From Macrostomum lignano (lineage: Eukaryota): a stretch of 64,000 bases of DNA. This document shows positions 13,015-53,624 of this stretch, one piece after another. Within the stretch, counting starts at the first letter, position 1, and each line of letters begins with the position of its first letter. The DNA lies in assembly GCA_002269645.1 (NCBI GenBank), contig NIVC01001286.1:62001-126000 (forward strand). Direction: 5' to 3'. The notes below the pieces were generated by a model that worked only from the letters and a program-made list of their open reading frames with translations, made no database searches and had not been told where the DNA came from. The position numbers and the translations under genes were made by a program.

Positions 13015-13803
13015 GCCTGTCTGTGTCTATTTGTCTGTCTATCTGCAATTGTCTATTGCCCTGCCTCACAAGCCCCGCTGCCCCGCCCCAGGTCGCCTCC
13101 AAGGGCACCATCTGCCTGCCAGAGTCACCCCTGCGGCCCTGCCGCGGTCCGTCCCGCTGCACTGGCTCCAGAGTCGACTGCCCGTCGCCGTCGCCACTGG
13201 CACCCGACGGCTCCGTGTGCAACAGCGGCATCGGCAAATGCCTGACCGGCGTCTGCGTGTCGGCCTGCTATCCCAACCTCGAATGCGCCTGCCCGGAGCC
13301 TCAGCACTCCTGCTTGCTTTGCTGTCGACGCGAGAATGGGGCAGATCAGAGCTGCTACCCGCTTGAACTACACGGCGGTAGAGTTAACCTGCCCGTTGAT
13401 TGGCCGTGTCGCTGGCAGGGCACCGGCGAGTTCAGGCGCCGGTGCACAGACAAAGGCACCTGCTCGATGTCATTGTCTACGGGGGCAGGTGATATTGTTC
13501 GAGGAGTAACTGGAGACTCTGAGGACAAGCCAAGTGGAAAGACCGGCGTTAGACTCATGCGGTTGAGCGTCTCGTACAGTGGAGGTCAGTCAGTCAGTCA
13601 GTCAGTCAGTCAGTCAGTCAGTCAGTCAGTCAGTCAGTCAGTCAGTCAGTCAGTCAGTCAGTCAGTCAGTCAGTCAGTCAGTCAGTCAGTCAGTCAGTCA
13701 GTCAGTCAGTCAGTCAGTCAGTCAGTCAGTCAGTCAGTCAGTCAGTCAGTCAGTCAGTCAGTCAGTCAGTCAGTCAGTCAGTCAGTCAGTCAGTCAGTCA
13801 GTC

Positions 13804-13835
<32 letters not shown>

Positions 13836-14284
13836 AGTCAGTCAGTCAGTCAGTCAGTCAGTCAGTCAGTCAGTCAGTCAGTCAGTCAGTCAGTCAGTCA
13901 GTCAGTCAGTCAGTTGCCTTCTTACTAAAGTCAGCCAGTCAGTAAAAATAGTAAAAATTTCATTTTATACAATATATTGCAGGCTCATTCGCGTCAAACA
14001 ACATCGTGTTTATTACAATAACAGTTACTCTCTTCATCTATGTCCCGTTGTGCTTGATTTTGCAGTACCGGGTAAGTTGATGCATCCGTAGTTATGTTTC
14101 GATTCCAGCTAATGTTTATATGGCATAATAAAAACTAGAATTTCTCAGGAGCCTGCCAAGAAATGACGGTCTTATAATTGTCTATTTTTTCAATTTCTTG
14201 CAGGACAAACTTGCCACTCAAGCCAGCAACGAGGATGTCCCGGATGAAGCCGTGATTTCCGATGTCACTCACGAAAAGGCTTAG
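8510..14284 (+). CDS. ADAM17: ADAM17/TACE-like metalloprotease-disintegrin
   Basis: Exons about 8510-8560 (first exon uncertain), 8616/8632-8743, 8825-8973, 9071-9162, 9248-9321, 9423-9923, 11859-12168, 12720-12899, 13092-13584, 13983-14071, 14204-14284; phases are consistent. Contains prodomain, Cys switch (PGAC), furin-like RSIR, zinc motif HEFGHNMGSMHD plus Met-turn, disintegrin CGNYRLDPGEECD, Cys-rich domain, and TM NNIVFITITVTLFIYVPLCLIL followed by DK, matching the ADAM17 pattern. Confidence 0.88.
10030..11330 (-). mobile_element. Possible LTR-derived insertion(s) in ADAM17 intron
   Basis: Two diverged related blocks (10600-10660 and 11238-11305: CTCAAAAC.GGCTC..ATTTATA...TATTGAAGGC) read as TATA-containing LTR-like segments on -. 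No ORF; boundaries not established. Confidence 0.3.
11592..11830 (+). mobile_element. SINE family A copy with internal deletion of the CORE-like part
   Basis: B box GGTTCGATTCC joins directly to AAATGGGTGCCAGC; the remainder aligns with 1512-1700; AT-rich tail. Confidence 0.8.
12195..12545 (+). repeat. Degenerate GAATCCCGAGGAGAATCC-type minisatellite in ADAM17 intron
   Basis: Repeated GGAATCCCGAGGAGAATCC variants. Confidence 0.75.
12928..13045 (+). repeat. (TCTG)n microsatellite
   Basis: Directly visible. Confidence 0.95.
13585..13914 (+). repeat. (GTCA)n microsatellite beginning at the splice donor
   Basis: About 82 units; the first GTCAGT is the inferred donor of exon 13092-13584. Confidence 0.95.
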
Positions 14285-14943: not shown

Positions 14944-17153
14944 ATGGAAGGAAAAGAGCGATTCACTGACCAGAGCCGAGCCCTGTCAGCTGCCATGAGG
15001 ACTGCGGGCTTCAAGTCCTCAAATGCAGCAGCTCAGAGCGGAGTAGCCTTGGCTCTTGAAGACTTGCTGAGGTTGCTGCTCAAGTCCCAAGATTCCTTAT
15101 TCGTGTTCGGCAGCTTCTGCGACGGCTGGGGCAGCTGCTTGAGCAAAATTGACGGCAGCATCGACTCAGACTCGGATATTGACATCACATTCGTGCTGAA
15201 GTCGAACTCGGTTCACATTACAGCTGATTGCAGTGCCTCGGAGACGAGTCAGTGCTTGGAAGGCTGCATGGTGGCTGAGTACGAGGACGGGCACGTGTCT
15301 TATCAGTCTAAAGGTGGGTCCAAGAAACGATCATTATAATTCTTTCCTGCAATGACACAAACGGTTTAGTGATGATGAGGGAGTGTTTAGAATGTGGTGC
15401 TGTGCGCCTATCCATGGGAGCCCTCACCTGCACCCTGACCTATTGGAAAGCGGCGTCCCCAGTTAGAGCTCATGTGTCAAACTGAGTTACAGCATTTTAA
15501 CACATGAAATGCGTCTCCTGGGACACCAAGAAAGGGAATTACGCTCGTAGATGGAATTTTACGACGCTTCTAGCCGCTTCTAGTTACAATTTAGTACGCT
15601 GTGAATCTCGTATTTTAGAAAGTACGCCAAGCTTACCTCTCGGGGGCGATGACCTACGCTTGTCGGATATCGACATTATTCCTGCTCGGCACTGCTGCAG
15701 CTATCCCCGCATCGAGCTGCTGTCGCCCGGCTACAGGTCCCACATTTCGACACAGATTTTGGAAGCCATCCGAACCGAGGTTCTCCAAGTGCCGCGGTGT
15801 CATGCCGTATCTGCGTCGCCTCCCGGACTAGAGGGCAGTCGGATGAGGGTGAGCACTACTCTGTTGGAGAGAATCGTCATGCACAACCTCTCCACAGTCC
15901 AAGGACAGTTGTTTGTGCTGCTCAAGTTCTTCATCAAGAGACACATCAGCTCTAAAGTGAGCGGTCTGAAGACGTACATGGCCAAGAACCTGCTGTTCTA
16001 CATGCTTGACGAGACGCCTGTCGAAGACTGGAGACCAGAAAACTTGTTGTCACTGTTGAAGCAGTCGCTGGAGATGCTGGTAGCTATGATGGAGAGCTTT
16101 GATAACGAAGAGATGAGCGATCCAACTCAAGCTGCTGCCGCAGACCGAAGACTCGAAGCCGTGTGCATGAGACACTTCTTCTTGCGCGATGCCGTCGTGT
16201 ACCTGAAGAAGGACCACGCAGACAAAAGGTCAATCGTTACTGAGACCAAAACCGCGATCGATGACATTCAGAAGATCGCTCAGGTCTTTGAAGCCGGTCT
16301 GACCAAAAACAGCGTCAGAGTTGTTCATCTTCACATTGCTCTTCAGCCTCTGATATACTTTGCTGACGTGATGCAATTTAGCAAGGGCGAGATGAACTTC
16401 AAGTGTAAAGAGATCTTCGGTATCGTGTGGGAGATTCAATCCCTGATGCACAGAGAGGCTACACCGATTCAGTGTCAGCCTGTGGCACCTGAAGACTTTG
16501 CACGGGTGCTGCAAAAAATCAGCGAGCTCGAGGGCTGTCATGAGGTAGTGAAGAAGTGTCTGACCATGATGGCTCACTACAAAGTCGGAATGCCGATAGG
16601 AGAGTCACGTGACCAGATTTTCGATGAAGAGTTCGGCGGCGTTCTGTGTCCGGAAGGAGACTCGACGCTGTCCGTGAAAGAAGGCAAAGCAGCGGTGATG
16701 AAGTTGCTGCAACGCTGCGACTCGCTCGGCATCGAGGTCTGCCATGATCGGATCTGCGCAGTGCGGTCGCTGCAGACAGAAATTTGGCAACTGTTTCAGG
16801 TGTTGTCCACATTTCTGAAAAACTGCAGAAGAAGTAGTTTATCCACCGACACTGCTCTACATGTGCTAGATTTCGCATCAGCAGCTCTACTCGCTACAAA
16901 TTTTCCTTTTCCGGTAATCAGTTCTTCTAAACCAGCTTTATTTAATCCGTCAGGAGGTTTAGGAATTTAATTATTTAATTATTTATTTTAACTTCAGGTG
17001 TTTAGAACTGAGGGCGATGGCTGGCGTTCTAGTGAAGTGAATTTCGCGCGGAATATCCTCATGATATTTTGCGAAGTTGTCGGTACCGAAGATTGTCCAG
17101 CCCTCAGAGACTGGTCAGATGACGAAGAGGAGGAAGCACTACAGTCCCAGTAA
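14944..17153 (+). CDS. Mab-21/cGAS-like nucleotidyltransferase (cGLR-like), copy 1 (about 606 aa)
   Basis: Exons 14944-15313, 15619-16913, 16998-17153 (last junction inferred from GTAATC donor and TTCAG acceptor). Pol-beta NTase signature FGSFCDGWG...DSDID, third acidic residue in SDIDIIPA, and Mab-21 helical-domain motifs CHAV, RVSTTLLER, LFVLLK, LKTYMAKNLLFY, W.PENL, MRHFFL. Confidence 0.82.
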
Positions 17154-17726
17154 TGTCAAACGTAGGCTTGATTCCATATCTCAATTTTTATAATTCGTAT
17201 GTGTTATACACTCGTGTTTCATTTTTTTGTTTTACTTTTTCAGACTGACAAAAAGTGACAACAATCATTGATGCTTTTGAATGAATTCACTGAAACTTGG
17301 GTGATCAACTTGGAAAATGGGAGAGGCTCAATACAATCTGATTTGTACTCGTATTTAGATTTATTAACAATACATAAAGATATTTTCAGATAGCCTTTTT
17401 TATGTCTGGGAGTACGCGGGCCTATAAAGCTTACTTGATAATTGAGTTAATTGGATGAATCAAGACATTTGTGATATTTACGACGATGTGTCTTCCACAT
17501 GTTGTTAGCCACCTCTTGTTACTCAGTAAATTCCTATATTTTATAAAGTTCAGCTTTGCAATCTCAAGAATGTTTAGTTCTGTTCCTTGTAAACAGTTTT
17601 TTTAATACTTCAATGTTTAAAGCTTATTTGCTAATTGCAAATTTATATAGTGTAGACGATAAAATAAAGAAATAAGTATAGTTACCCATTTCGTTCAAAT
17701 TGGTTTTGGTTTTGGTCATGTTCAAA

Positions 17727-19490
17727 CTGATCACCCATGTGTCTGACTGTTCACCCATGTGTCTGACTGATTACCCATGTCTCTGACTGTTCACCCATGT
17801 GTCTGACTGATTACCATGTCTCTGACTGTTCACCCATGTCTCTGACTGTTCACCCATGTGTCTGACTGATTACCATGTCTCTGACTGTTCACCCATGTGT
17901 CTGACTGTTCATCCATGTGTCTGACTGATTACCAATGTCTCTGACTGTTCACCCGTGTCTGACTGTTCACCCATGTGTCTGACTGATTACCCATGTCTCT
18001 GACTGTTCACCCATGTGTCTGACTGATTACCATGTCTCTGACTGTTCACCCATGTGTCTGACTGTTCATCCATGTGTCTGACTGATTACCAATGTCTCTG
18101 ACTGTTCACCCATGTGTCTGACTGTTCACCCATGTGTCTGACTGATTACCCATGTCTCTGACTGTTCACCCATGTGTCTGACTGTTCACCCATGTGTCTG
18201 ACTGTTCACCTATGTGTCTGACTGTTCACCCATGTGTCTGACTGTTCACCCATGTGTCTGACTGTTCACCCATGTGTCTGTCTCATTGCCCATGAGTTTG
18301 ACTGTTCACCCATGTGTCTGACTGTTCACCCATGTGTCTGACTGTTTACCCATGTGTCTGTCTCATTGCCCATGAGTTTGACTGTTCACCCATGTGTCTG
18401 ACTGTTCACCCATGTGTCTGACTGATTATCCATGTCTCTGACTGTTCACCCATGTGTCTGACTGTTCACCAATGTGTCTGACTGTTCACCCATGTGTCTG
18501 TCTCATTGCCCAAGTGTCTGACTGTTCACCCATGTGTCTGACTGTTCACCCATGTGTCTGTCTCATTGCCCATGAGTTTGACTGTTCACCCATGTGTCTG
18601 ACTGTTCACCCATGTGTCTGACTGTTCACCCATTTGTCTGTCTCATTGCCCATGAGTTTGACTGTTCACCCATGTGTCTGACTGTTCACCCATGTGTCTG
18701 ACTGTTCACCCATGTGTCTGACTGTTCACCCATGTGTCTGACTGATTACCCATGTCTCTGACTGTTCACCCATGTGTCTGACTGTTCACCAATGTGTCTG
18801 ACTGTTCACCCATGTGTCTGTCTCATTGCCCAAGTGTCTGACTGTTCACCCATGTGTCTGGCTGATCACCCATGTGTCTGCCTGTTCACCCATGTGTCTG
18901 TCTCATTGCCCATGAGTTTGACTGTTCACCCATGTGTCTGACTGTTCACCAATGTGTCTGTCTCATTGCCCAAGTGTCTGACTGTTCACCCATGTGTCTG
19001 ACTGTTCACCCATGTGTCTGTCTCATTGCCCATGAGTTTGACTGTTCACCCATGTGTCTGTCTTATTGCCCATGTGTTTGACTGTTCACCCATGTGTCTG
19101 TCTCATTGCCCATGTGTCTGACTGTTCACCCATGTGCCTGCCTCATTGCCCATGTGTCTGACTGTTCACCCATGTGTCTTACTGTTCACCCATGTGTCTG
19201 ACTGTTCACGCATGTGTCTGACTGATTACCCATGTCTCTGACTGTTCACCCATGTGTCTGACTGTTCACCCATGTGTCTGACTGTTCACCCATGTGTCTG
19301 ACTGTTCACCCATGTGTCTGTCTCATTGCCCATGTGTTTGACTGTTCACCCATGTGTCTGTCTCATTGCCTATGTGTCTGACTGTTCACCCATGTGTCTG
19401 ACTGATCATCCATGTGTCTGACTGACCACCCATGTGCCTGACTGATTACCCATGTGTCTGACTGATCACCCATGTGTCTGACTGATTACC
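17727..19490 (+). repeat. 20-bp minisatellite (GACTGTTCACCCATGTGTCT)n with variant units
   Basis: About 1.75 kb array; variant units ...TCTCATTGCC... and ...GATTACC... Confidence 0.96.
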
Positions 19491-20234
19491 TACAATTCGC
19501 ACAGGAGTTTTGCTACGTATTTATCTGTAACTTACGTATTTTTCTGAACACATGTACGAGCTGCTGAACACACGCCAAAGATAACTAACAAAGGCTCGAC
19601 CAACCTCGGAACCCAAGACTCTGTGAGAGCAGCTGCTAGTTGAATTACTTGATTGAGTTGCAGGCGGCATCGTCCGGCGGATGAAGCGTGGAAGCGGGCG
19701 AGACCGCTCATTACGCTAGCCCATGACGACCAATAACTTCCATAACTTCCAACAAAGTATTTTCGCAAGTCCCTTCGGCTACTCGTTGAAGCTATTTACT
19801 GGAAGTGAAAAAGGTAAACTTACTGCAGAACACAGGCAAAGAGCTGCAATACACTGCTCCCCAAACCAAGCGGCAGGTTCCTCAAGAGAAAAAATCCCTC
19901 CCTGCGTGAGGACCCAAGGACGCAAGGGAAACCGTTCCTAGCAAGCGAACATCAGCACGGAGTTACACTGACACATTAGAGGGTGGGTTTGTGGGTCCTC
20001 GGCGCCAATAAATCTGTTCAGGAAGGCCCTTCAAAGTGCGCCTTGCAAGATAAAAAACAAGAGACAGAGTCCCAGACTCTTGGACTGTTTCCAGTCAAAA
20101 AGGGTCAAATGTGAGCATCGCTGGCTGGGGAAAGAGGCCATCCCAGACTAATACTGCACAGATACATCACGCCATTTTTTGCAGGACCCGAGTTTTTAGA
20201 CGTAATCGACCTCGGCAGCCGCTAGTCGACTCAA

Positions 20235-20770
20235 TGGATGTTTGAGACGTTTCCTGGCTATCATCATCATTAGGTCGGTAAACGGTTATGGCTGTTGGTG
20301 TATCCATTTCTCGACAGCGAATCTCCAACTCCTTCGATCCAAGGCAATCCTGCTCCGCTGCACCATCCACTCTCCACTCCACTCCATCAGCTAGACTGCC
20401 TGTCCAATCACCTTGTGGCCTGCCTCTGTCCCTTCGCCCCTCACCACCAACTTCAACCACGGCCTTCAGCGCTCCATCACTTCTCGCACCATGCCTGAAG
20501 GAGCGGAATTTCCTTCCACAAGGCCTCCATCATAGATCTGTAAGTCTTCATCTCGAAAGATCTCGGTTGCTTTTCATACTTCTTCTCCATTGCCCAGCAC
20601 TCACACGCATAGAGAAGATTTGCCATGACTACCAATATCATTAGCAGCATTTTATTTTTCATGTGGATGTTTTTTGCTTTCCAGATGTTGTCCACGCAGT
20701 TTTACGAGTGCAATTTTAGCTCTTCCAGTCAGTATCAGAATCTCCTTGTCTGACTTTCCCTGCATTGTTT
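20235..20770 (-). mobile_element. 5'-truncated RTE-clade LINE fragment
   Basis: Translates on - to IWKAKNIHMKNK..LV...LLYACECW...FEMKTYR and GRRDRGRP...W; (TGA)n near the 3' end; flanked by direct repeat CTAGTCGACTCAA at 20222-20234 and 20771-20783. Confidence 0.8.
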
Positions 20771-21013
20771 CTAGTCGACTCAAGTGTAGATTGGCTGGCC
20801 AATCGCTGTTAGCGGGGCCAGAGGGGGGGTTGTCGTCGCCCGTGTTTGGGGGTGCTTGGTCCTGGGGTGGGTGTCTGTGGGGCCTTTTTAGTCCCGCGCG
20901 TTGTGCCCACCTCAGCCTATCTCTCCTCGCCAGCTTGCGTGCGTTTTTTTGCGATTTCTGGCTAGCCCAACTTAATTATTCAACTTACTCTGGGTACTAT
21001 GAGTTTGCGTAGG

Positions 21014-22047
21014 ATGACTGTAAATCAGCTACGTGAAGAATTGAGTGATAGGGGCCTGAGCACGCACGGTTACAAGAAAGACCTGGTCAGCAGACTCTCC
21101 ACTGCGATGAGCCAGAGCGAAGCAGCTAGTCGGCGGAACAAGCGGCGTCAAACTCCGCGGAGACCGACAGCGAAGGTCGGCGGCAGCAGCAGCAACAACG
21201 GCTGGAGGCAGGGGAGGCGCTGGACCTATCAGAGCTCCGGCGGAAGATAGCTAGCCTGGAATCGGAGACGGCAGCAATGCGCCAGCAGCTGGAAGGCCGA
21301 TTTAGACCAGGTGAGGTGGACCAACAGCTTCTTAATGAGCCCTCTGATTGTAGCAGCGACATGAATATCCCGAGTATACTCAGAGGTCCCGGGTTCGAGA
21401 CCAGGCTCGAGCCCTCAGTAGCTCAACTAGGGCTACGGGCGGCACCACTCGTCGTTGCGGATTTCTGCGGTTGCGACCCTCGGACGGCGTCGGCGAGTCG
21501 TAGGGAAAAGGTGCTGCATCCAACCGCCAATCAGCCTAAACCCGAATCGCTGGGAATCGGTCAGTGGATAGTCGGCAACGCGCGCATCCTCGACGCCTTG
21601 ATCTCTAGGGGACAGCTCGACCTGGAAGGCGTTCGGCAGTACTTGCAGTACAATGTACAGATCGGTGAGCTGGTCGAGGCAGGTTACGACACCACCAGGA
21701 TCATGCGGTTCGACGACGCATTCAGAAGAGAGCAGCAGGCGGGCATGCAAGACTGGGCGCGACCGAGTTTCTCGCTGGTGGCACGGCACCTCATTGCCCC
21801 GCAGCAGACTCCACAACATGCCCGTTCTCGCACGGACAGGAAGATTCCGGTGATTCAAGGAGCGCCCGTCTGCCTCAAGTTCAACACCCGTGGTGGCTAC
21901 AAGTTCCAGAATTGCAAGTACACTCATGCGTGCCGAGACGCAACACGCGGCAAAAAACAAATAGCCGCGGCTCCAGTGGCCGCAAGTTTTAATCCCAAGT
22001 TTTTACTCCATTCGCGACATCAATTTCAATCCGAGTGGCTCCCTTGA
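21014..22047 (+). pseudogene. DIRS gag-like ORF1: N-terminal SAP domain and C-terminal Cys/His finger, frameshifted
   Basis: MTVNQLREELSDRGLSTHGYKKDLVSRL fits the SAP/HeH pattern; CLKFNTRGG..FQNCKYTHAC is a degenerate C-x-C-x-H finger typical of these gags. Confidence 0.7.
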
Positions 22048-23520
22048 CGCAAATGCCTGGGCGAAGGAGCTGAACGGCGACCCCGACGGGCCTTTTTTAA
22101 TTGACGGAGTCCAAAACGGCTTCGCGCTCACTACTGAGACAGATTTTAAACCTTCCGAAGTTGAGAACTACTCGTCCGCCATTGAGTACAAGACGTTGGT
22201 TGAAGAGCAATTGCAGCGTGAGATCGCCAGCGGGCGGTATGTGTCAATCAGCCGACGTCCGTGCAAGATCTCCGCGCTTGGTGCCATCCCGAAAGAGGAC
22301 GGTGGAGTCCGTATCATCCACGACTGCAGTCGTCCGGAAGGCTATGCGGTCAACGACCACTTTATCGCAGACCACAAGATTAAGTTTGAGACGGTTAGCG
22401 GCCTCTGCTCACAACTCAAGCCCGGTGACTTCACGGCCAAGATCGATCTCAAGGAGGAGTATCGCTCAGTGGGTGTTCATCCTTCTTCTCTCGACGCTCT
22501 GGGCATCAAATGGCAATTTAGCGGCGACAGCGAGCCTACCTACCTGGTCGACACCCGGCTGAGCTTCGGCGCTGCGGCCTCGGTGTACCATTTCAAAAGG
22601 CTGTCTAATTAGGCGGTGGTGCGCATGATGCAACGGCGCGTGTTCACCTGCGTTGGCTACCTCGACGACTTCGCTGTGGCGGCGAGCACCTACGAGGCCT
22701 GTGTCGAGGCTTACGAGAGCTTGAGGAGCCTGGCGACGAGCCTCGGTTTCACCATCAACGAAAAGAAGTCTAGCGGGCCGTCGCGGCGCACGGTTTTCAT
22801 GGGCGTCCTGATTGACACAGAGTCGGGGATGCTGAGCATCCCACCGGCCAAGCTCAGTGCACTCAAAGACGCACTTGGGAGCTGCTTGCATCGACGCGGT
22901 GCCATCAGCAAGCGCGACCTTCAGCGGATCTGCGGCAAGCTGTCCTGGGTGAGCAGCGTGACCAGGAAAGGCCGAGCTTCCATCCGCCCTCTACTGATGC
23001 TGGCGAGCCGGGCGACTAGACCTGGTGACAAATTGCGGCTGACCCCGCACCTCACCGAGTCGCTGCACTGGTGGAGGAGAAGCCTTCAGTCCGTTGGCTG
23101 CGCGCCCATATAGCCTCGCTACTCTCGAAGAATCGTCATCGAGACTGACGCCTGCAACTCGGGTGGTGCCTGCATTGTTCGGGAAGCCAATAAGTCCGAC
23201 TGGCTCTACATCAACTGGAAGAACGACGCTGGTGGCCTTTTTGCTTCGGCCCACATCAACGTAAAGGAGACCATCACGCCTGTCCTCAGCATCCTCGCGG
23301 CCCCTGGGCCGCTTCGCCGGTGTGGACATCGTCGTGTACAGCGACAGCTCGGCGGCTGTCGGTGCGCTGAACAAGCTCAGCTCGCCATGTAACGACGTCA
23401 ACCGGCTCCTGCACACGCTGTCGCTTGCCTGCGACGCGTGGGGTCTGCGGCTGCGGGCCTTTCACGTTCCAGGCGCCTTCCAGGTCCTGCTGGACCCGGC
23501 CTCTCGCCTTGCTTCTAGAA
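22044..23520 (+). pseudogene. DIRS reverse transcriptase and RNase H, disrupted
   Basis: RIIHDCSRP, KIDLKEEYRSV, RLSFG, YLDDF; RNase H motifs IETDAC, HINVKE, YSDSSAA, HVPG..DPASR. Confidence 0.85.
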
Positions 23521-23565
23521 CTTTTTTCTCCGCTTCTACCGTAGCCTGCATGATTTGGCTGCTGA

Positions 23566-24597
23566 CTCCTGCTGCATCTCGCGCCGCGCGCTCTGCTCTG
23601 CCTCCGCCTCCCTTTTGCATTTACAGGTCCGGCGCCTCCTCCCTCCCACCTACCCGGGCCGCTTCTTCGCTTCCTCGCCGACGCCTGGGCTCCTAGTACC
23701 AGGGCATCGTACGCTTCAAACCTCGAACAGTGGCAGCGCTTCTGCAACCTCGAAGGTGTTCAGCCACCAGCGGCGTCCCCGGTGCACCTGGTCGAGTATG
23801 TGCGACGCCTGGCTAAGCGCGGCGTGGCACCCGGTAGCCTCGGTGGACACCTGGCGGCCATCAGCTGGAGCTTCAAGCTGGCGCAACTCCCCGACATCAC
23901 CAAGTCCGGCCTGATCGATCTGGCAGTTAAGAGCGCCAAACGGACAAGCGGCCATTCAGTCAAGCAGAAAGACCTCATCACCCCGGCGGTTCTGTTTTCA
24001 CTGGCAAATCAGGTGAACCCAAGAGACCCTGCGGACGCCGCCTTTTGGGCCGCCGTGCTCTGCTGCTTCTGGGCGCTTCTCAGGAAAGCAAGTGTCTGCG
24101 GGCACCACTCCATTCTCGTCGGCGACACTCAGGCCGATAGTCAGTGGTGGAGACTCCGAGTTCGACAGTCGAAGACCAACCAATGCGGACAAGACTACCA
24201 GGAGGCGGTGCTGCCAGCGCTCCGAAGCCACCCACTTTGTCCTGTCCAAGCCCTGCGGTGGCATTTTCAGACTAACAAGCTGCTGTCTGCACCGGCGCTC
24301 ACTTGGCTGTTTTGCGTCCACATGGCCGGAAGCTGGTGCCCGATGACATCGCGTCAATTCAACCGCCGCCTCGCTTGGGCTCTGGCAGATGCGGGTTGTG
24401 CGGCGACAGCTTTCTCAGGCCACTCTCTACGACGGGGTGGCGTCTGTCTGGCGTTCGACAGCGACCTCGACGTGGAGCAGATCAAGCGGCTGGGCGGCTG
24501 GCGCAGCGGCGCCGTTTCACGTTACCTGCCGCAGTCGGGGGGGTTGCCTCCGTCTCCTGCGCCCAAGGTCAAGCGTGTGCTGTCGGCACCTCTCTAG
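23566..24597 (+). CDS. DIRS tyrosine recombinase ORF (uninterrupted, no in-frame ATG at its start)
   Basis: Open from 23566. N-terminal WAPSTRASY...W.RFC; catalytic LLRKAS, SKT, HSLRRGG, GGWRS, SRY. Confidence 0.85.
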   Translation, partial: LLLHLAPRALLCLRLPFAFTGPAPPPSHLPGPLLRFLADAWAPSTRASYASNLEQWQRFCNLEGVQPPAASPVHLVEYVRRLAKRGVAPGSLGGHLAAISWSFKLAQLPDITKSGLIDLAVKSAKRTSGHSVKQKDLITPAVLFSLANQVNPRDPADAAFWAAVLCCFWALLRKASVCGHHSILVGDTQADSQWWRLRVRQSKTNQCGQDYQEAVLPALRSHPLCPVQALRWHFQTNKLLSAPALTWLFCVHMAGSWCPMTSRQFNRRLAWALADAGCAATAFSGHSLRRGGVCLAFDSDLDVEQIKRLGGWRSGAVSRYLPQSGGLPPSPAPKVKRVLSAPL

Positions 24598-24879
24598 CGC
24601 TCGCCTGACTCCCCCGTCGCCGTGTACCCTACTTTTTTAATCCCTTTTTCGGGTTTTTTGGGATGTTTTGCTCGTCTCGTAAGTTGCCCATACAGGGCGG
24701 TAGGATGTGTTGCTCGTGCTATCCAATTGTTGCCTTTGTTCTCTCCCTCCGGCCGTTCCGCTAATGGATGTTTGGGACGTTCTTCGACGATGTATATCCT
24801 TGAAGGCAGGTTGACACTAATTCCTTTCGACTCAAAACTCTTCGCCGATCAAGAGCCAATATCCAGCGTCGATCTGTTT

Positions 24880-24970
24880 CGTGAATTCTTCAAGGCACGG
24901 AGAGTGTACATGCCAGACGATTAGAAAGTCAGGGCCGCTGTTCACCTTGAGTGAGCGTGTGTGTGAGTTG
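24880..24970 (+). mobile_element. SINE family B/C shared central domain copy
   Basis: GAGAGTGTACATGCCAGACGATTAGAAAGTCAGGGCCGCTG matches 4008-4046 and 2123-2141. Confidence 0.6.
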
Positions 24971-25095
24971 TCGGCTTGTATACAGTATCCGGGCTTGCTT
25001 CTGCTCGTAGCTGCCGACGCTGGAAGCGACGTGCGATGATTTTGCTTATGACGTTGCGGCAGGGTGACCTTAGCTAGTCCTCCTTGCAATTATAT

Positions 25096-25521
25096 TATTG
25101 GTTTTTGCGAGCTATCTCAGCCAAGGAGCAAGCAAACTCATCCATCCCATAGATTTCAATACGACGAAGGAGGTTGTTTTAACCATAGACTATCACGTTT
25201 TTTCAACCAAACTCATCCAACGGGCGAGCAATCTCAGCCATAGCTTGTCTGCCCATTCATTTCCTCTTCCCTTCTTTCTTTCCTCCTCCTCCGATGGCTC
25301 AGTTGCGACAAACATCCAACTCCGACAGAGAGAAGCTAATCAAGTAAATTAAATTTTTCGCTTAATAAACAAGCTATGGCTGAGATTGCTCGCCCGTTGG
25401 ATGAGTTTGGTTGAAAAAACGTTATAGTCTATGGTTCAAACCACCTCCTTCGTCGTATTGAAATCTATGGGATGGATGAGTTTGCTTGCTCCTTGGCTGA
25501 GATAGCTCGCAAAAACCAATA
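25096..25521. mobile_element. MITE / foldback element with about 153-bp terminal inverted repeats, TA flanks
   Basis: 25096-25248 is the reverse complement of 25369-25521 with a few mismatches; 120-bp spacer; TA at both ends is compatible with Tc1/mariner-type insertion. Confidence 0.85.
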
Positions 25522-25751
25522 TTAATATTAAGGGCAATCTCTTCGGAATGGGAGTCTAATACCCAGTCCTTTGGTACTAAAATTTCAGAATACACGTATT
25601 GAACAGATAGAAGTAGAAGTAGGTTTCAAGCATATACTCGTAAGACACATGTACGACGTATTAGGCAACAATGATGATGTTTAATCGTCACCTAATAAAA
25701 GTATTTAAGCACATTTGAAATAAGAACTTGCGACTTCACTTACTCGTAGAC

Positions 25752-26067
25752 CATGGGTCAGCAAACTCCGGGCTGTAAAGTCTCGCTGTCCGGTCTTCGG
25801 GTCCTTTGAAGCTTCACGATAGCAATCCGACGCGCTTAAGGTTAGTCTCTTCTTAGTTCTCTCCTCTGTCTTTTGTCTCCTCTTTCAGCTTTTTACTCAT
25901 CTCTTATCTCATCGCATTTCTCATCTCGCCTCTCCTCTCTTCTGTCATCTCCTCCATCTTTTATCTCCTCCATTACCTCTCCTTTCCACTCTCTCATCTG
26001 ACCCGCAGTAATGATCTATTGTAGATTCTTTATCCGGCTCTTAAAGTAAAAATTTTGTCGACGTCTG
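25752..26067. mobile_element. Possible old hAT-type MITE
   Basis: Left CATGGGTCAGCAAACT and right AATTTTGTCGACGTCTG resemble degenerate CAGGGGTCGGCAAACT-type TIRs; flanks TCGTAGAC / ATGTAGAT are a poor 8-bp TSD. Confidence 0.4.
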
Positions 26068-26094
26068 ATGTAGATGATCAAACAAAGTTCTGAC

Positions 26095-26189
26095 TAGGGA
26101 CAACTTAAACTAGTTTAGCAGGTTTAGTTTAGTTTAGTTTAGCTGAACTAGTTTAGTTCGGCAACTTAAACTAGTTTAAGTTGTCCCTG
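26095..26189. mobile_element. 95-bp hAT-type MITE
   Basis: TIR AGGGACAACTTAAACTAGTTT (26096-26116 / 26168-26188); 8-bp flanks GTTCTGAC / CTTCTGAC (one mismatch). Confidence 0.7.
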
Positions 26190-26554
26190 CTTCTGACTTG
26201 ATTCTGTTTCAAATATACTTAATAATTCATGAATATCTAGAAAATACATTTCGTTTCCTTCTGCAACAAATACCCATTACAAAGCTTGCAATGATCAACG
26301 ATACTTCCTTTGTGTAATTGTGTGGCAGAGCTACTCCCTGTATTTTAAACGAAATTCTACCTTATACGCATACTTATACACTTTTATACGCATGTAAAAG
26401 TTATCTAGTATGACTGGTATGAATATCGTCAACTAGTGTGTAGAATATAGAAAACTAATGTCCATCAACGCATGCCAGTTGTTGTCGAACTCGTATTAAA
26501 CAATCAACCAGAAGCTTACCTGCCTGTCCTCTTTGTTTATGGGGCTTCTTTCAT

Positions 26555-26705
26555 CACTCAATCAGCATCATCAGCATCACCATCATCATCATCAGCATCT
26601 ATCATCTCAGCATTATTAACATCAGCATCATCATCATTATCATTATCTCAGCATCATCATCATCATCAGCATCATTTGCTTCATTCGAAATTCGAACAGC
26701 CATCA
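26555..26705 (+). repeat. Degenerate (CAT/CAG)n trinucleotide tract
   Basis: Directly visible. Confidence 0.85.
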
Positions 26706-26967
26706 GTATATTTGGATCAAAATTTTGAAACTAAAGAATTAAAGAAGCATCAACTTGAATAACTACAGGCAAAATGGCCTCTTTATAAAGCATAGTGTTC
26801 GGTTTGCATAGTGTACGAGCGTATTGTTATATAGTACCGCCTCTAAGGTACCTAGATATGTTTAAAAAGCTACCGAGAAAATCTCACAGAGAAATAGCAA
26901 ATCTAGGTGCTAGCAAAATTTCAATGCGACATACCGAAAGGCTGCGTTTTCTGTGTTCGGTCTTGAA

Positions 26968-29237
26968 ATGACCGATGAAGAGCGATTCACTGACCAGAGC
27001 CGAGCCCTGTCAGCTGCCATGAGGACTGCGGGCTTCAAGTCTTCAAATGCAGCAGCTCAGAGCGGAGTAGCCTTGGCTCTTGAAGACTTGCTGAGGTTGC
27101 TTCTCAAGTCCCAAGATACCTTCTTCGTGTTCGGCAGCTTCTGCGACGGCTGGGGCAGCTGCTTGAGCAAAATTGACGGCAGCATCGACTCAGACTCGGA
27201 TATTGACATCACATTCGTGCTGAAGTCGAACTCGGTTCACATTCCAGCTGACTGCAGTGCCTCGGAGACGAGCAATTGTTTGAAAGGCTGCAAGGTGGCT
27301 GACTACGAGGACGGGCACGTGTGTTATGCATCAAAAGGTTAGCCGGAACTTTCAACGATCCGAGTTTTGAAACCCTTAGCTTGATCGGCTTGATAAATAG
27401 GTTCGGCAGTTTAGTATGTAAGAGTCAGGGAATTCCTGAAAAGGGGACAAATGGGCCCTAAAGACTGGCTTTTATTTACCAACTGTAAAGAAAATAACAA
27501 GATATACGTTTCTGAATTAGACAGACAGATATTAAAGATATTAAACAGACAGAAGTAGTAAGTGGGGCGTCCAGATAATAAAAGCAGGGGTGGAGTGCGT
27601 GACTAAGGAAAGAGGCGAGATTGAGGAGCCAATCAGAATGAAGCAACTTAGCAAGGCAGAGAGAGAAGAATAACAAGATTGAACTAGACAGAGAGGCAGA
27701 GAAAACATAGTAAACAGAGACAAGTGAAGGTGAACTAAGAAACGACTAAGTCACCAATAATGCGACACACGTTAAATGTCCTATGAAATTACGAAGCATC
27801 CGACTGCATGAGAAAGACAACAAAAACAGAGCGGTTCACAAACCACAGCCGAGCGCTTAGGCCAGTGGTCTAGTATGCTGCTATATGGCCTACAAACAAA
27901 ACCACACTAATTGTGTGAACTTTTCAGAACCATCGCCCTGCCTTTCATTCAACGGGGCAACTTTTCGACTGCCGGAAATTGAAGCCATCTCTGCTCGGCA
28001 CTGCTGCAGCTATCCGCGCATCGAGCTGCTGTCGCCCGGCTACAGGTCCCACATTTCGACACAGACTTTGGAAGCCATCCGAACCGAGGTTCTCCAAGTG
28101 CCGCGGTGTCATGCCGTATCCGCGTCGCCTCCCGGACTAGAGGGCAGTCGGATGAGGGTGAGCACTACTCTGTTGGAGAGAATCGTCATGCACAACCTCT
28201 CCACAGTCCAAGGACAGTTGTTTGTGCTGCTCAAGTTCTTCATCAAGAGACACATCAGCTCTAAAGTGAGCGGTCTGAAGACGTACATGGCCAAGAACCT
28301 GCTGTTCTACATGCTTGACGAGACGCCCGTCGAAGACTGGAGACCAGAAAACTTGTTGTCACTGTTGAAGCAGTCGCTGGAGATGCTGGTAGCTATGATG
28401 GAGAGCTTTGATAACGAAGAGGTGAGCGATCCAACTCAAGCTGCTGCCGCAGACCGAAGACTCGAAGCCGTGTGCATGAGACACTTCTTCTTGCGCGATG
28501 CCGTCGTGTACCTGAAGAAGGACCACGCAGACAAGAGGTCAATCGTTACTGAGACCAAAACCGCGATCGATGACATTCAGAAGATCGCTCAGGTCTTTGA
28601 AGCCGGTCTGACCAAAAACAGCGTCAGAGTTGTTCATCTGCACAATGCTCTTCTGCCTCTGATATACTTTGCTGACGTGATGCAGCTTAGCAAGGGCCAG
28701 CTGAACTTCCATTTCAAAGAGATCTTCAATATCGTGTGGGAGATCCAAACCCTGATGCACAGAGAAGCTACACCGAGTCAGTGTCAGCCTGTGGCACCTG
28801 AAGACTTTGCACGGGTGCTGCACAAAATCAGCGAGCTCGAGGGCTGTCATGAGGTAGTGAAGAAGTGTCTGACCATGATGGCTTACTACAAAGTCGGAAT
28901 GCCGATAGGAGAGTCACGTGACCAGATTTGCGATGAAGAGTTCGGCGGCGTTCTGTGTCCGGAAGGAGACTCGACGCTGTCCGTGAAAGAAGGCAAAGCA
29001 GCGGTGATGAAGTTGCTGCAACGCTGCGACTCGCTTGGCATCGAGGTCTGCCATGATCGGATCTGCGCAGTGCGGTCGCTGCAGACAGAAATAAGGGCGC
29101 TCGTAAACTTTCTCGCTAAGTTTATTGGTAGTTCTGAAGGCAACGGAGGTTTTGAAAATCGAAGAAAAATTATAGTCTCATTATTCCATTTTTTCGTGAG
29201 TGACAAACGTTTTCAAAATGACTGCATACTCTTGTAA
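26968..29237 (+). CDS. Mab-21/cGAS-like nucleotidyltransferase (cGLR-like), copy 2 (about 559 aa)
   Basis: Exons 26968-27337 and 27928-29237 (phase 1 intron at the same position as copy 1). Same NTase and Mab-21 motifs; colinear with copy 1 without indels at offset 12309 over 27928-29092. Confidence 0.82.
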
Positions 29238-29385
29238 TGAAATATTTAATGACGACCCTGCACACTTCGCTAAAAGGATCACTGCAACTTATTTTAGGCC
29301 AAATTTCGCTTAAAATACAACTAGCTAGAAAACAATTTTTTAACCACTCTTGGTAATAAAGGACTATTTTTGCTCACCTAAAATC

Positions 29386-29735
29386 GGCCGGGGACGTAGC
29401 CCAGTGGTCTGGCGCGGCGCTCTGATGTGCCAGCGGCCCAAGCTCGAATCCAAGTGCAGTCACATTAATTTGGGGCTAAAATTGGAAACTCGGCTTGGTC
29501 TGCTCGTGCAATTAACGCTATTGACGGCCAACCCCCAAGGCACAGTGAAGTGTACATGTCTAACGATAAATAAAGTTAAGGTCGCTGTGTGAGTGTGTGC
29601 CTGCGTGTATGACTGCGTACGTATCCGCGCGCTTGTGTGCCTGCTTAGGGGAGTCGGCGAGATTGGCAGTAATGCCTCTTGCCGGTTGTGCGACAATGTC
29701 GCTTAAAGTGCGCCAGGGTGCACACAGCCTCTTAA
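29386..29735 (+). mobile_element. tRNA-derived SINE family B
   Basis: A-box-like TAGCCCAGTGG, B-box-like GCTCGAATCC; full-length homolog inverted at 58340-58670. Confidence 0.75.
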
Positions 29736-35817: not shown

Positions 35818-36974
35818 TCACAGATTCTTGCGACTGTCTGAAAAGTAAAATTCAGGGGCTGGTTTAGGGGCGATTCTTTAGCTGGTTTAGGGGCGATTCT
35901 TAAGCTGGTTTAGGGGCGATTCTTAAGCTGGTTTAGGGGCGATTCTTAGGCTGGTTTAGGGGCGATTCTTAAGCTGGTTTAGGGGCGATTCTTAACTTGT
36001 TTAGGGGCGATTCTTAGGCTGGTTTAGGGGCGATTCTTAACCGGTTTAGGGGCGACTCACCCCGATTTGGAGCAGCCCCAGACTGCATCATCATTCTCTC
36101 CAGGCGCATCTTTCGACTGCCGCCTTCGCCATCGTTGAGGCTGTCGTCTGCTGATCCGCGAGAGCCCTTAGTCAGGGATTCAAAGGCGAATAGCAAGAGA
36201 GAGATGCCTGCGAATTGGAAGGAAGGTTTCACGCACATGTTTTGCACAAGAAAAAGCCAAGGCCCGATTGAAGAACCCAAAGTCCCGATTGATGAACCCA
36301 AAGTTCCGATTTAAGAACCCAAAGTCCCAATTGAAGAATCAGAAGTCGCGATTGAAGAGCCCAAAGTCCCGATTGAAGAATTCAAAGTCCCGATTGAATA
36401 GCCCAAAGTCCCGATTGATGAACCCAAAGTCCCGATTGAAGAACCCAAAGTCCCGATTGAAGAATCCAAAGTCCCAATTGAAGAATCCAAAGTCCCGATT
36501 AAAGAGCTCAAAGTCCCGATTGAAGAACCCAAAGTCCCGATTGTAGAACCCAAAGTTTAAAGACTCTAAAACGATTCTAAAGACGCAAACGCAAATAATC
36601 ACCAATAAGTACCAATACATACCTGCAATACAGCAAGGCGATATGACTCCAAAAGTCCACACACTGGTGCCCCAAACGTATATCTCGCCGAGAAAATGTA
36701 GCAAAGTCATTAGAAAAGTTGTAACAGTTAACAGGCGAATGCAGGAATCGTCGGGATTAGCACAGAACACCAGTCGCACTAATCCGCAGAACATTGTCCA
36801 CAAGGCAAACTGTCTGGATGCCAGACGTGTAACGGACTGCGGATTCCCAGTGTACACATTTCTTGCCAATAAGTCTGGATTCCAGACAGCCTGGGCTCCG
36901 TTAATAACGGAGATTAAACCAATTGCTCCGATCCAGCCGCGAAGATAGTCAGAGAAATTGAGTAATTTTAACAT
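35818..36974 (-). CDS. ERG28: ERG28 / C14orf1-like ER membrane protein (about 172 aa)
   Basis: Exons 36974-36623, 36207-36061, 35837-35818. LRGW..., VYTGNPQSVTRLASRQFALWT, LLHFLGEIYVWGT and GVISP align with the ERG28 family pattern. Confidence 0.88.
35855..36055 (+). repeat. 23-bp minisatellite filling ERG28 intron 2
   Basis: (GCTGGTTTAGGGGCGATTCTTAA)n. Confidence 0.93.
36262..36556 (+). repeat. 21-bp minisatellite in ERG28 intron 1
   Basis: (GATTGAAGAACCCAAAGTCCC)n. Confidence 0.93.
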
Positions 36975-37124
36975 TATCACTGCTATTGGGGTGGATTACT
37001 GTGGGATTTTATGGTTGGGGGATGTTAGTTCAAGTATACAATGCAATATACAACTGTTATTAGTTAATCATTGTGGGCTTATTAGGTAAAACTAACTTTA
37101 TAGGATTTGAATCTAAAAGATCTA

Positions 37125-53145: not shown

Positions 53146-53624
53146 TGACATTTTACCAGCAGCAGAAAATGTGCTACTTTGAACTTACATTTACATTTAA
53201 AGTAGAATTTTTCCTAGAACCGTATCGTAAGTCGGTGACTGCTTGTGCAAATCCCCTAGCATTTCAGCTTTTTGAACCCCGCGTGGGTGTCCATGGCTGG
53301 CAAAATGCGCATAAACGTATTTGACAGATTGCAGTCAGTGCGTAACCCCAAAAACTTCTGATTAGGATTCCGTCGGCTGTGCAGTACAAAATGATTGATT
53401 AATTATATAGAGTCCACTTGTCGGTCGGAAATGAATAAAATTCCTTGGATCAGCGCTTGGATCTGCATCTGATGGTGTGGTATCTAAACTGTTTACGTTG
53501 AACAGGGAAAATAAAATAATAAACACAGGCAGCGAGTAATTTGCACAATTGATATAAACATGTAAATTTACTGACGCGTTAGAGAAATCTTTGTAAAGTC
53601 AGAGAGGTTGAAATAGTTCCGATA

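What the first reader, a model, noticed from the sequence alone, without database searches (positions are those of the whole stretch)
14944..29237. Tandem pair of intron-containing cGAS-like receptors (cGLR/Mab-21 NTases) with an unusual signature, probably from a flatworm
Seen: two spliced genes with a complete pol-beta NTase acidic triad (GSFCDGWG...DSDID plus a third D/E) and Mab-21 helical domain, plus a long C-terminal extension I cannot assign to any domain. The usual WRxSFSxxE motif reads MRVSTTLLER and the stretch between DxD and the third acidic residue is short (about 65 aa). Known: animal cGLRs are pattern-recognition enzymes that make cyclic dinucleotides for STING. Inference: this is a lineage-specific, catalytically competent cGLR clade. 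My recollection is that cGAS/STING was reported lost in (mostly parasitic) flatworms; if STING is also absent here, the product must signal through an unknown effector.
Basis: partly seen in the sequence, partly recalled or inferred. Interest (0 to 1): 0.85.

Follow-up and report, generated by a model that had tools for sequence, protein, structure and literature searches.

The report
Two flatworm cGAS-like receptor genes
The region holds two neighbouring, spliced copies of a cGAS-like enzyme gene from the free-living flatworm Macrostomum lignano, members of a large gene family in that species that a 2023 survey already catalogued and partly tested, so they are real and probably working but not a new kind of thing.

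Summary
There are two same-strand, intron-containing genes: copy A at 14944-17153 (3 exons, 606 aa) and copy B at 26968-29237 (2 exons, about 559 aa, 3' end uncertain). Both encode a Mab-21/cGAS-fold nucleotidyltransferase with an intact GS...DxD...D/E active site, followed by a roughly 250-aa C-terminal extension. The source is Macrostomum lignano or a very close relative: the nearest proteins are 94-97% identical and every strong hit is M. lignano. An AlphaFold model matches cGAS, MB21D2 and MAB21L1 (Foldseek probability 1.0). The active-site residues are kept in 75 of 81 family domains.

The "unusual signature" falls within the published cGLR motif. The spacings are 20 and 58 residues, and R-S-T-E replaces the canonical R-S-S-E.

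The family is already on record. Li et al. 2023 (the cGLR survey) noted that only "most" platyhelminths lack cGLRs, and they cloned five M. lignano members for their 140-enzyme screen, one about 40% identical to these genes. None is among the 15 enzymes they characterised as active.

The proteins are acidic (pI 5.2-6.1), which argues against a cGAS-like basic groove for nucleic acid. The C-terminal extension is specific to this clade and could not be assigned to a fold. Whether M. lignano has STING could not be tested with these tools. Verdict: new members of a known kind, with modest interest.

The parts
14944..15313 (+). Copy A exon 1. Encodes the N-terminal helices and the NTase palm, with GS56-57 (15109-15114), D78 (15175-15177) and D80 (15181-15183).
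   Evidence: The GT donor lies at 15314.
15314..15618 (+). Copy A intron 1 (305 nt, GT...AG, phase 1).
   Evidence: It cannot be aligned with the copy B intron.
15619..16913 (+). Copy A exon 2. Encodes the third catalytic acid D142 (15672-15674), RVSTTLLE (15846-15869), the Mab-21 helical bundle and most of the C-terminal extension.
16914..16997 (+). Copy A intron 2 (84 nt, GTAATC...TTCAG).
   Evidence: The junction reproduces the P0001 protein sequence ...NFPFPVFRTEG....
16998..17153 (+). Copy A exon 3. Encodes the end of the C-terminal extension and an acidic tail, with stop TAA at 17151-17153.
26968..27337 (+). Copy B exon 1, with GS (27133-27138), D78 (27199-27201) and D80 (27205-27207).
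   Evidence: It is 95% identical to A over 26978-27339.
27338..27927 (+). Copy B intron 1 (590 nt, GTTAGC...TTTTCAG).
27928..29237 (+). Copy B exon 2, with the third acid E142 at 27981-27983. The stretch 27991-29092 is 97.6% identical to A. The last roughly 48 codons are only loosely similar to A. The 3' end is uncertain because of an alternative GTGAGT donor at 29197.

Best explanation
These are two tandem paralogues, about 12 kb apart on the same strand, separated by a retroelement and minisatellites. They belong to the Macrostomum lignano radiation of cGAS-like receptors (cGLRs), which are Mab-21-superfamily nucleotidyltransferases.

Shown: each gene is spliced and has an open reading frame. 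Each encodes an NTase palm plus a Mab-21 helical bundle with all catalytic residues in place, followed by a largely helical extension of about 250 aa found only in this clade.

Inferred: like other cGLRs, the enzyme rests inactive, is switched on by binding a ligand, and then uses two NTPs to make a cyclic-dinucleotide-type second messenger that a downstream receptor reads. Because the proteins are acidic (pI 5.2 and 6.1), the activator is more likely a protein or a non-nucleic-acid ligand than dsDNA or dsRNA lying in a basic groove. The C-terminal extension, and the N-terminal ankyrin repeats of many paralogues, are the likeliest sensor or regulatory modules.

The two copies have been partly homogenised by gene conversion. 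Introns, flanks, codons 124-145 and the 3' ends stayed divergent.
For: - Gene models and splice sites.
- Source organism: the best hits, P0001 and P0002, are 97% and 94% identical, and all strong relatives are M. lignano.
- Fold: the AF2 model has pLDDT 69.7 and pTM 0.73. The top 39 Foldseek PDB hits are all cGAS, MB21D2 or MAB21L1, with probability 0.99-1.0, about 370 aligned columns and target TM-score about 0.5.
- Sequence: a family profile searched against PDB sequences returns only cGLR1 (8gjy) and cGAS at the top, though the E-values are weak at 0.04-0.2. Pfam Mab-21_C is just below threshold for A and B (20.5 and 20.7 bits against a cut-off of 24.1) and above threshold in four of the six paralogues scanned.
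- Active site: the spacing fits the published cGLR motif. S plus three acidic residues are kept in 75 of 81 family domains, and the R-S-[ST]-E positions are conserved.
- Selection: across the Mab-21 core, A against B gives dN 0.004 and dS 0.028, which indicates purifying selection.
- Published classification: Li et al. 2023 classed M. lignano relatives as cGLRs with predicted active sites and cloned five of them. PAA57558.1 is my P0006, 39-41% identical to copy A.
- Charge: pI values come. The published rule is that nucleic-acid-sensing cGLRs have pI above 8.5 and that acidic cGLRs probably sense other ligands.
- Mosaic identity between the copies.
Against: - There is no biochemical evidence for any member of this clade. 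The 15 active cGLRs described by Li et al. come from insects, anemones, molluscs, hydras and corals, with no flatworm among them. I could not see the per-enzyme result for the five M. lignano proteins in their screen.
- Sequence similarity to characterised cGLRs is weak. Pfam is below threshold, PF03281 gives no hit, and phmmer against PDB finds nothing.
- The residue before GS is F, not Q or T.
- The structural model is of only medium confidence.
- No expression data were available, so splicing rests on consensus sites and on database gene models.
- No receptor for the presumed product has been identified.
Confidence: 0.6

Rival explanations
1. The proteins are non-enzymatic Mab-21-like scaffolds or adaptors. 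They keep the fold, and perhaps bind a nucleotide, as MAB21L1 and MiD51 do, but they signal through protein-protein contacts via the C-terminal extension or ankyrin repeats and make no second messenger.
For: MAB21L1, MiD49 and MiD51 also appear among the structural matches. No flatworm enzyme is among the published active cGLRs, although five were cloned. The motif departs from the canonical form (F-GS, STT instead of SFS). A large extra domain and ankyrin fusions suggest interaction modules.
Against: The full catalytic set (S plus three acidic residues) is retained in 75 of 81 domains across a radiation whose members are as little as 30-40% identical. Such retention is not expected without catalytic constraint. 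cGAS ranks above MAB21L1 and the MiD proteins in Foldseek. Li et al. state that many true cGLRs are inactive in vitro simply because their ligand is unknown.
Confidence: 0.2
2. The proteins are active nucleotidyltransferases with a different chemistry from cyclic dinucleotide synthesis. They might make linear 2'-5' oligonucleotides like OAS, or add nucleotides to RNA or protein.
For: There are faint Pfam matches of exon 1 to the MTPAP-like palm and to Polbeta NTase (E 0.02-0.2). One gene model in the family carries the name "PAP-associated domain-containing" (P0023). The product of acidic cGLRs is not predictable from sequence.
Against: Those Pfam hits are far below threshold and reflect the shared pol-beta palm. 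No OAS, TUTase or poly(A) polymerase appears among the 50 Foldseek matches listed. The matches are cGAS/Mab-21 family members down to rank 41 plus rank 43; rank 42 and the remaining ranks are low-probability unrelated proteins. The R-S-x-E substrate-pocket motif of cGAS is conserved (mapping it onto cGAS R376/S378/E383 is my inference from the motif).
Confidence: 0.12
3. One or both copies are decaying duplicates with no function. Copy B is the likelier candidate.
For: Copy B has an E for D at the third acid, a diverged block at codons 124-145, and a different, shorter C-terminus without the acidic tail. The C-terminal extension evolves fast between the copies (dN/dS about 0.7). The locus is full of repeats and a retroelement.
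Against: Both reading frames are open over more than 550 codons with consensus splice sites. E is an accepted residue at that motif position ([DE]). The Mab-21 core shows purifying selection (dN/dS about 0.14).
Confidence: 0.08

Closest known systems
Macrostomum lignano cGLRs listed by Li et al. 2023 (screen entries 89-93: PAA86972.1, PAA45980.1, PAA57558.1, PAA93208.1, PAA68676.1)
   Same: They share the species, the family-specific motifs (GSxxxGWG, SDxDxT, RVST/SFxxER, GLKTYHAK, CMxHFF) and the C-terminal extension. PAA57558.1 is my P0006, 39-41% identical to copy A.
   Different: The window genes are other paralogues, closest to UniProt A0A1I8HU34 and A0A1I8H961. They lack the N-terminal ankyrin repeats that at least three of the five listed proteins carry (PAA86972.1, PAA45980.1 and PAA68676.1). 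None of the family has a reported product or ligand.
Vertebrate cGAS (for example PDB 4K98, 4K9B, 4O6A)
   Same: They share the bilobed NTase-plus-helical-bundle fold (Foldseek probability 1.0), the GS / DxD / D catalytic set, and an RxSxxxE pocket motif.
   Different: Sequence identity is only 12-17%. The window proteins are acidic rather than basic. I did not recognise the cGAS zinc-thumb H(X5)CC(X6)C motif in the sequence, though I did not test this formally. They have an extra C-terminal domain of about 250 aa and no disordered basic N-terminus.
Acidic, ligand-unknown cGLRs (for example Pocillopora Pd-cGLR at pI about 5.0, and human MB21D2)
   Same: These also have a low pI, which implies a non-nucleic-acid activator. 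MB21D2 is among the structural matches (7lt1).
   Different: Pd-cGLR is auto-active in vitro and makes a known product. Nothing is known for the flatworm proteins. MB21D2 lacks the C-terminal extension.
MAB21L1/2 developmental proteins and MiD49/MiD51
   Same: They share the Mab-21 fold.
   Different: According to Li et al., the Mab21L1/2/3 proteins lack a predicted functional active site, whereas the window proteins keep theirs. M. lignano has a separate canonical Mab-21 (PAA76228.1, pfam03281 E 4e-91).

Membership tests
cGAS-like receptors (cGLR), criteria of Li et al. 2023 | Active-site motif h[QT]GS - X8-20 - [DE]h[DE]h - X50-90 - h[DE]h | tested here: met
   The sequence reads VFGS56-57, then 20 residues, then D78-I-D80-I, then 58 residues, then I-D142-I in A or I-E142-A in B. 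The only departure is F where Q/T is expected. The five M. lignano proteins accepted by Li et al. read M/L/F/T at that position. The motif is conserved in 75 of 81 family domains.
cGAS-like receptors (cGLR), criteria of Li et al. 2023 | [quoted passage not shown] | tested here: met
   Foldseek alignments of about 370 columns cover whole cGAS catalytic domains. By sequence only the helix bundle is detectable: the profile against PDB gives E 0.04-0.2 to cGLR1 and cGAS, and Pfam PF20266 gives E 5e-4.
cGAS-like receptors (cGLR), criteria of Li et al. 2023 | Predicted structural homology to known cGLR/CD-NTase enzymes by AlphaFold modelling | tested here: met
   The model has pLDDT 69.7 and pTM 0.73. 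The top 39 PDB matches are cGAS, MB21D2 or MAB21L1, with E down to 9e-5.
cGAS-like receptors (cGLR), functional definition | Ligand-activated synthesis of a nucleotide second messenger | not testable with these tools
   This needs recombinant enzyme assays. No flatworm enzyme is among the 15 published active cGLRs.
cGLR-STING pathway | A STING receptor encoded in the same genome | not testable with these tools
   No eukaryotic genome collection can be searched here. A word-indexed protein search with a recalled vertebrate STING would give an uninformative negative, so I did not run it. Table S5 of Li et al. has no Macrostomum entry. The platyhelminth rows displayed (four cestodes) are 0 cGLR / 0 STING.
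Pfam Mab-21 (PF03281 Mab-21; PF20266 Mab-21_C) | Score at or above Pfam's gathering threshold | tested here: not met
   PF20266 scores 20.5 bits for A and 20.7 bits for B against a cut-off of 24.1. PF03281 gives no hit at E<=10. Paralogues do pass PF20266: P0021 28.4, P0022 28.1, P0016 26.2 and P0018 24.6 bits. The shortfall reflects divergence, not absence of the domain.
MAB21L1/2-type non-catalytic Mab-21 proteins | Degenerate active site and high cross-phylum sequence conservation | tested here: not met
   The catalytic set is intact. The clade is restricted to Macrostomum. The canonical Mab-21 of M. lignano is a different protein, PAA76228.1.
OAS / other pol-beta NTases | Best structural or profile match to OAS, TUTase or poly(A) polymerase folds | tested here: not met
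   None appears among the 50 Foldseek matches listed. Pfam MTPAP and Polbeta hits are only faint (E 0.02-0.2).

The most novel reading that the evidence does not exclude
Macrostomum lignano, unlike the parasitic flatworms and planarians examined so far, has kept and greatly expanded an acidic cGLR clade of dozens of genes. Many are fused to ankyrin repeats, and all carry a private C-terminal domain. If STING is missing here as in other flatworms, these enzymes would feed a nucleotide signal into a receptor or effector of a kind not yet described in animals. Alternatively, the C-terminal domain itself could act as a built-in effector or sensor.
Probability: 0.2. Interest if true: 0.75.

Novelty: new member of a known kind. 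Interest (0 to 1): 0.3.

Why it matters
Flatworms are usually cited as a lineage that lost cGAS-STING signalling (Schistosoma, Schmidtea, cestodes). M. lignano is the exception, with a large cGLR radiation that has no published ligand, product or receptor.

The two genes here are clean, ankyrin-free, full-length representatives. That makes them convenient for expression, and M. lignano is, to my knowledge, a transgenic and RNAi-tractable model.

Finding their activator and their downstream receptor would show how cGLR signalling is wired in a spiralian lineage. It would also show whether the pathway can run without STING. In themselves, though, the genes add paralogues to a family that has already been catalogued.

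Tried and rejected
- phmmer of the protein against PDB sequences found nothing relevant.
- Pfam on the ORF pieces and on the spliced proteins gave only a sub-threshold Mab-21_C hit.
- I modelled the C-terminal extension alone with a 12-sequence alignment. The result had pLDDT 51 and pTM 0.39, too poor to interpret. Foldseek on it gave no match with E<0.7, so the domain stays unassigned.
- A second word-indexed search with the family alignment added only more M. lignano paralogues.
- A search for further copies or fragments in the window found none.
- I looked for a copy-A-like exon 3 downstream of copy B and found none.
- A tRNA-like stretch at about 29385-29460 is not called as a tRNA gene by ARAGORN.
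- I considered searching for STING with the last protein search and rejected it. The index needs shared 5-residue words, I can only supply vertebrate STING from memory, and a negative result would mean nothing.
- Literature searches for Macrostomum together with cGLR, STING or Mab-21 found no paper that discusses these genes in its main text.
Full report
**1. What is in the sequence**

The interval contains two genes on the + strand.

Copy A starts at ATG 14944. Exon 1 runs to 15313 (donor AAG|GTGGGT). A 305-nt intron follows, then exon 2 at 15619-16913 (acceptor TTTTAG|, phase 1; donor CCG|GTAATC). An 84-nt intron follows, then exon 3 at 16998-17153, ending in TAA. The product is 606 aa. The exon 2-3 junction is not a guess: it reproduces the peptide ...NFPFPVFRTEGDGW... 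of the database gene model P0001.

Copy B has exon 1 at 26968-27337, a 590-nt intron, and exon 2 from 27928. The frame is open to TAA at 29235-29237, giving 559 aa. A consensus GTGAGT donor at 29197 could lead to a different short ending instead.

tblastn with both proteins and with family members finds no further copy in the window.

**2. Relationship of the two copies**

The two loci align only in two blocks. The first is 14954-15315 against 26978-27339, at 95% identity. The second is 15682-16783 against 27991-29092, at 97.6% identity.

The promoter regions, the introns, the first 21 codons of exon 2 (codons 124-145, which include the third catalytic acid) and the 3' ends are diverged. In codons 124-145 nearly every codon differs, and dS is saturated. 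The alignment with paralogues shows that the tail of B is still loosely homologous to that of A.

I infer that this mosaic reflects older duplicates partly homogenised by gene conversion. Within the shared blocks, dN/dS differs by region:
- The Mab-21 core (codons 146-355) gives dN/dS of 0.004/0.028.
- The C-terminal extension (codons 356-511) gives 0.042/0.060.

So the core looks constrained and the extension evolves fast. The counts are small.

**3. Source organism**

All 15 hits of the first protein search and all 24 of the profile search are Macrostomum lignano proteins. With the corrected gene model, P0001 is 97% and P0002 is 94% identical to copy A. P0002 is evidently the same gene with a frameshifted stretch in the model.

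The window comes from M. lignano or a very close relative. The abundance of 20-23-bp minisatellites and a tyrosine-recombinase retroelement show a repeat-rich locus.

**4. What the proteins are**

Sequence signals to known families are weak but all point the same way:
- Pfam Mab-21_C (PF20266) scores 20.5 and 20.7 bits against a cut-off of 24.1. PF03281 gives no hit.
- A single sequence searched against PDB finds nothing.
- A profile of the family puts cGLR1 (8gjy) and 14 cGAS sequences at the top of the PDB list, with E 0.04-0.2, aligned over GLKTYxAKxLLFYML...CMxHFF.
- Four of the six paralogues scanned pass the Pfam threshold.

Structure gives the clearer answer. An AlphaFold2 model of copy A has pLDDT 69.7 and pTM 0.73. 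Its first 39 Foldseek matches in the PDB are all cGAS, MB21D2 or MAB21L1. Probability is 0.99-1.0, E reaches 9e-5, about 370 columns align, and the TM-score is about 0.5 when normalised to the target. MiD49 and MiD51 follow. No OAS, TUTase or poly(A) polymerase appears among the 50 matches listed.

**5. Active site**

The sequence VFGS(56-57), then 20 residues, then D78-I-D80-I, then 58 residues, then I-D142-I (I-E142-A in copy B) fits the cGLR definition used by Li et al. 2023: h[QT]GS X8-20 [DE]h[DE]h X50-90 h[DE]h. The only exception is F at the [QT] position.

It keeps the R, S and E of WRxSFSxxE, and other M. lignano paralogues read FRVSFSFQEK and LRVSFGFQEK, which bridges to the canonical form.

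Across all family domains I could align, 75 of 81 keep S plus three acidic residues. One of the six exceptions is the frameshifted model P0002. R-S-[ST]-E dominates at the second motif. Mapping these residues onto the cGAS substrate-pocket residues R376/S378/S380/E383 is my inference from the motif and was not tested by superposition.

**6. The family**

A profile search of 1.84 billion representative proteins gives 578 hits at E<=1e-3 and 76 at E<=1e-30.

Of the 15 hits with E<=1e-18 that I looked up, 13 are M. lignano. The other two are an unnamed JGI metagenome protein (P0075, on a 3.2-kb contig) and an unnamed ENA protein (P0096). P0075 also covers the C-terminal extension (profile positions 182-572); P0096 reaches only profile position 447.

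Weaker hits, at E about 1e-12 to 1e-20, are from a bivalve (Mercenaria, Sinanodonta), an annelid (Lamellibrachia) or a cnidarian (Actinostola), or are unnamed. They match mainly the Mab-21 core.

Many M. lignano members are 900-3400-aa proteins with long N-terminal ankyrin arrays. The two window genes lack these.

The C-terminal extension, about residues 350-606 of A, aligns among the M. lignano members compared and has no Pfam match. Modelled alone it gives pLDDT 51 and no structural neighbour. It remains an unassigned, mainly helical, clade-specific domain.

**7. What is already known**

Li et al. [quoted passage not shown]

Their table of the 140 cloned enzymes contains five M. lignano proteins, rows 89-93. 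One is PAA57558.1, which is my P0006 at 39-41% identity to copy A. Their domain table lists M. lignano accessions with Ank_2 fusions, and lists PAA76228.1 as the canonical Mab-21.

The 15 active enzymes they describe come from insects, anemones, molluscs, hydras and corals. They note that many cGLRs were inactive in vitro, probably for want of the right ligand.

Their table of cGLR and STING counts has no Macrostomum entry. The platyhelminth rows displayed (four cestodes) score 0 and 0. Loss of cGAS and STING is reported for Schistosoma (PMC4117786) and Schmidtea (PMC13563047).

No paper in the searchable library discusses the Macrostomum genes in its main text.

**8. How it most likely works**

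Shown: two intact spliced genes, a cGAS/Mab-21 fold, and a catalytic set under family-wide conservation.

Inferred: a ligand-gated nucleotidyltransferase that makes a cyclic-oligonucleotide-type signal.

Both proteins are acidic (pI 5.2 and 6.1), as are all 15 paralogues I checked (pI 5.1-6.7). Li et al. found that dsDNA- and dsRNA-sensing cGLRs have pI above 8.5. They proposed that acidic cGLRs respond to non-nucleic-acid ligands. I therefore favour a protein or small-molecule activator. I also think the fast-evolving C-terminal extension, and the ankyrin repeats in paralogues, are the sensing or regulatory part. That last point is inference only.

My confidence that these are cGLR-family proteins with a competent-looking active site is about 0.9. 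My confidence in the whole mechanism is about 0.6.

The rivals, described in their own sections, are:
- a non-catalytic scaffold (0.2);
- a different NTase chemistry (0.12);
- decay of one copy, most likely B (0.08).

**9. Novelty and score**

However, the family has already been catalogued and sampled experimentally, and the supposed oddities of the signature are within the published definition.

What remains open is the ligand, the product, the role of the C-terminal domain, and above all whether M. lignano has STING. I could not test the last point because no eukaryotic genome collection is searchable here.

I rate this as new members of a known kind, with interest 0.3. The reading that would make it important is a large cGLR radiation signalling without STING. 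I give that about 0.2 probability, because published surveys found that cGAS-type enzymes and STING tend to be kept or lost together.

Noticed in passing
window 20999-24597 (+): A retroelement lies between the two genes. It has a SAP-domain ORF (20999-21250, Pfam SAP E 7e-10), reverse-transcriptase pieces (22196-23113, RVT_1 E 1.4e-5) and a tyrosine recombinase/integrase-like ORF (23782-24597, Phage_integrase E 1.7e-3). That is a DIRS-like tyrosine-recombinase retrotransposon layout. The ORFs are split across frames, so it may be degraded.
   Followed up: partly
window 14954-15315 / 26978-27339 and 15682-16783 / 27991-29092: The two gene copies are 95-97.6% identical only in these two exon blocks. 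Introns, flanks, codons 124-145 (around the third catalytic acid) and the 3' ends are diverged. This mosaic suggests gene conversion between older duplicates. dN/dS is about 0.14 in the Mab-21 core and about 0.7 in the C-terminal extension.
   Followed up: partly
window 17726-19484; also 332-994, 38145-38764, 43546-45006, 45651-46379, 59016-59743, 63154-64000: The window is unusually rich in long minisatellites with 16-23-bp units. A 1.76-kb array of a 20-bp unit lies directly downstream of copy A. These arrays create long spurious ORFs.
   Followed up: no
window 47041-49579; 13585-13914; 52802-53147: There are long tetranucleotide microsatellites: (TCTA)n of about 2.5 kb, (GTCA)n and (CTGT)n. 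The first explains the extreme GC and AT skew at 46-50 kb.
   Followed up: no
window 4395-5003 (-), 36339-36980 (-), 56590-57255 (-): Exon-sized ORFs of ordinary neighbouring genes are present: a class I/II aminotransferase (E 1.6e-17), an Erg28-like protein (E 2e-22) and an APCDD1-like domain (E 1.9e-12). I did not build gene models for them.
   Followed up: no
window ~29385-29460 (+): A tRNA-like stretch (GGGGACGTAGCCCAGTGGTC...CTCGAATCC) lies just downstream of copy B. ARAGORN calls no tRNA gene, so it may be a fragment of a tRNA-derived SINE.
   Followed up: partly
P0075 (JGI/IMG metagenome protein, 467 aa, contig 3238 bp): Of the hits I looked up, this is the only relative not named as M. 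lignano that also covers the clade-specific C-terminal extension (profile positions 182-572, E 5.6e-52). It presumably comes from environmental flatworm DNA in a metagenome.
   Followed up: no
P0158/P0159/P0161, P0023, P0091 (M. lignano database proteins): Some family gene models or cluster mates carry the names Skp1, BTB, PAP-associated or Bromo domain. They could be further domain fusions to the cGLR module or merged gene models. P0016 contains two cGLR modules in one 1346-aa model.
   Followed up: no
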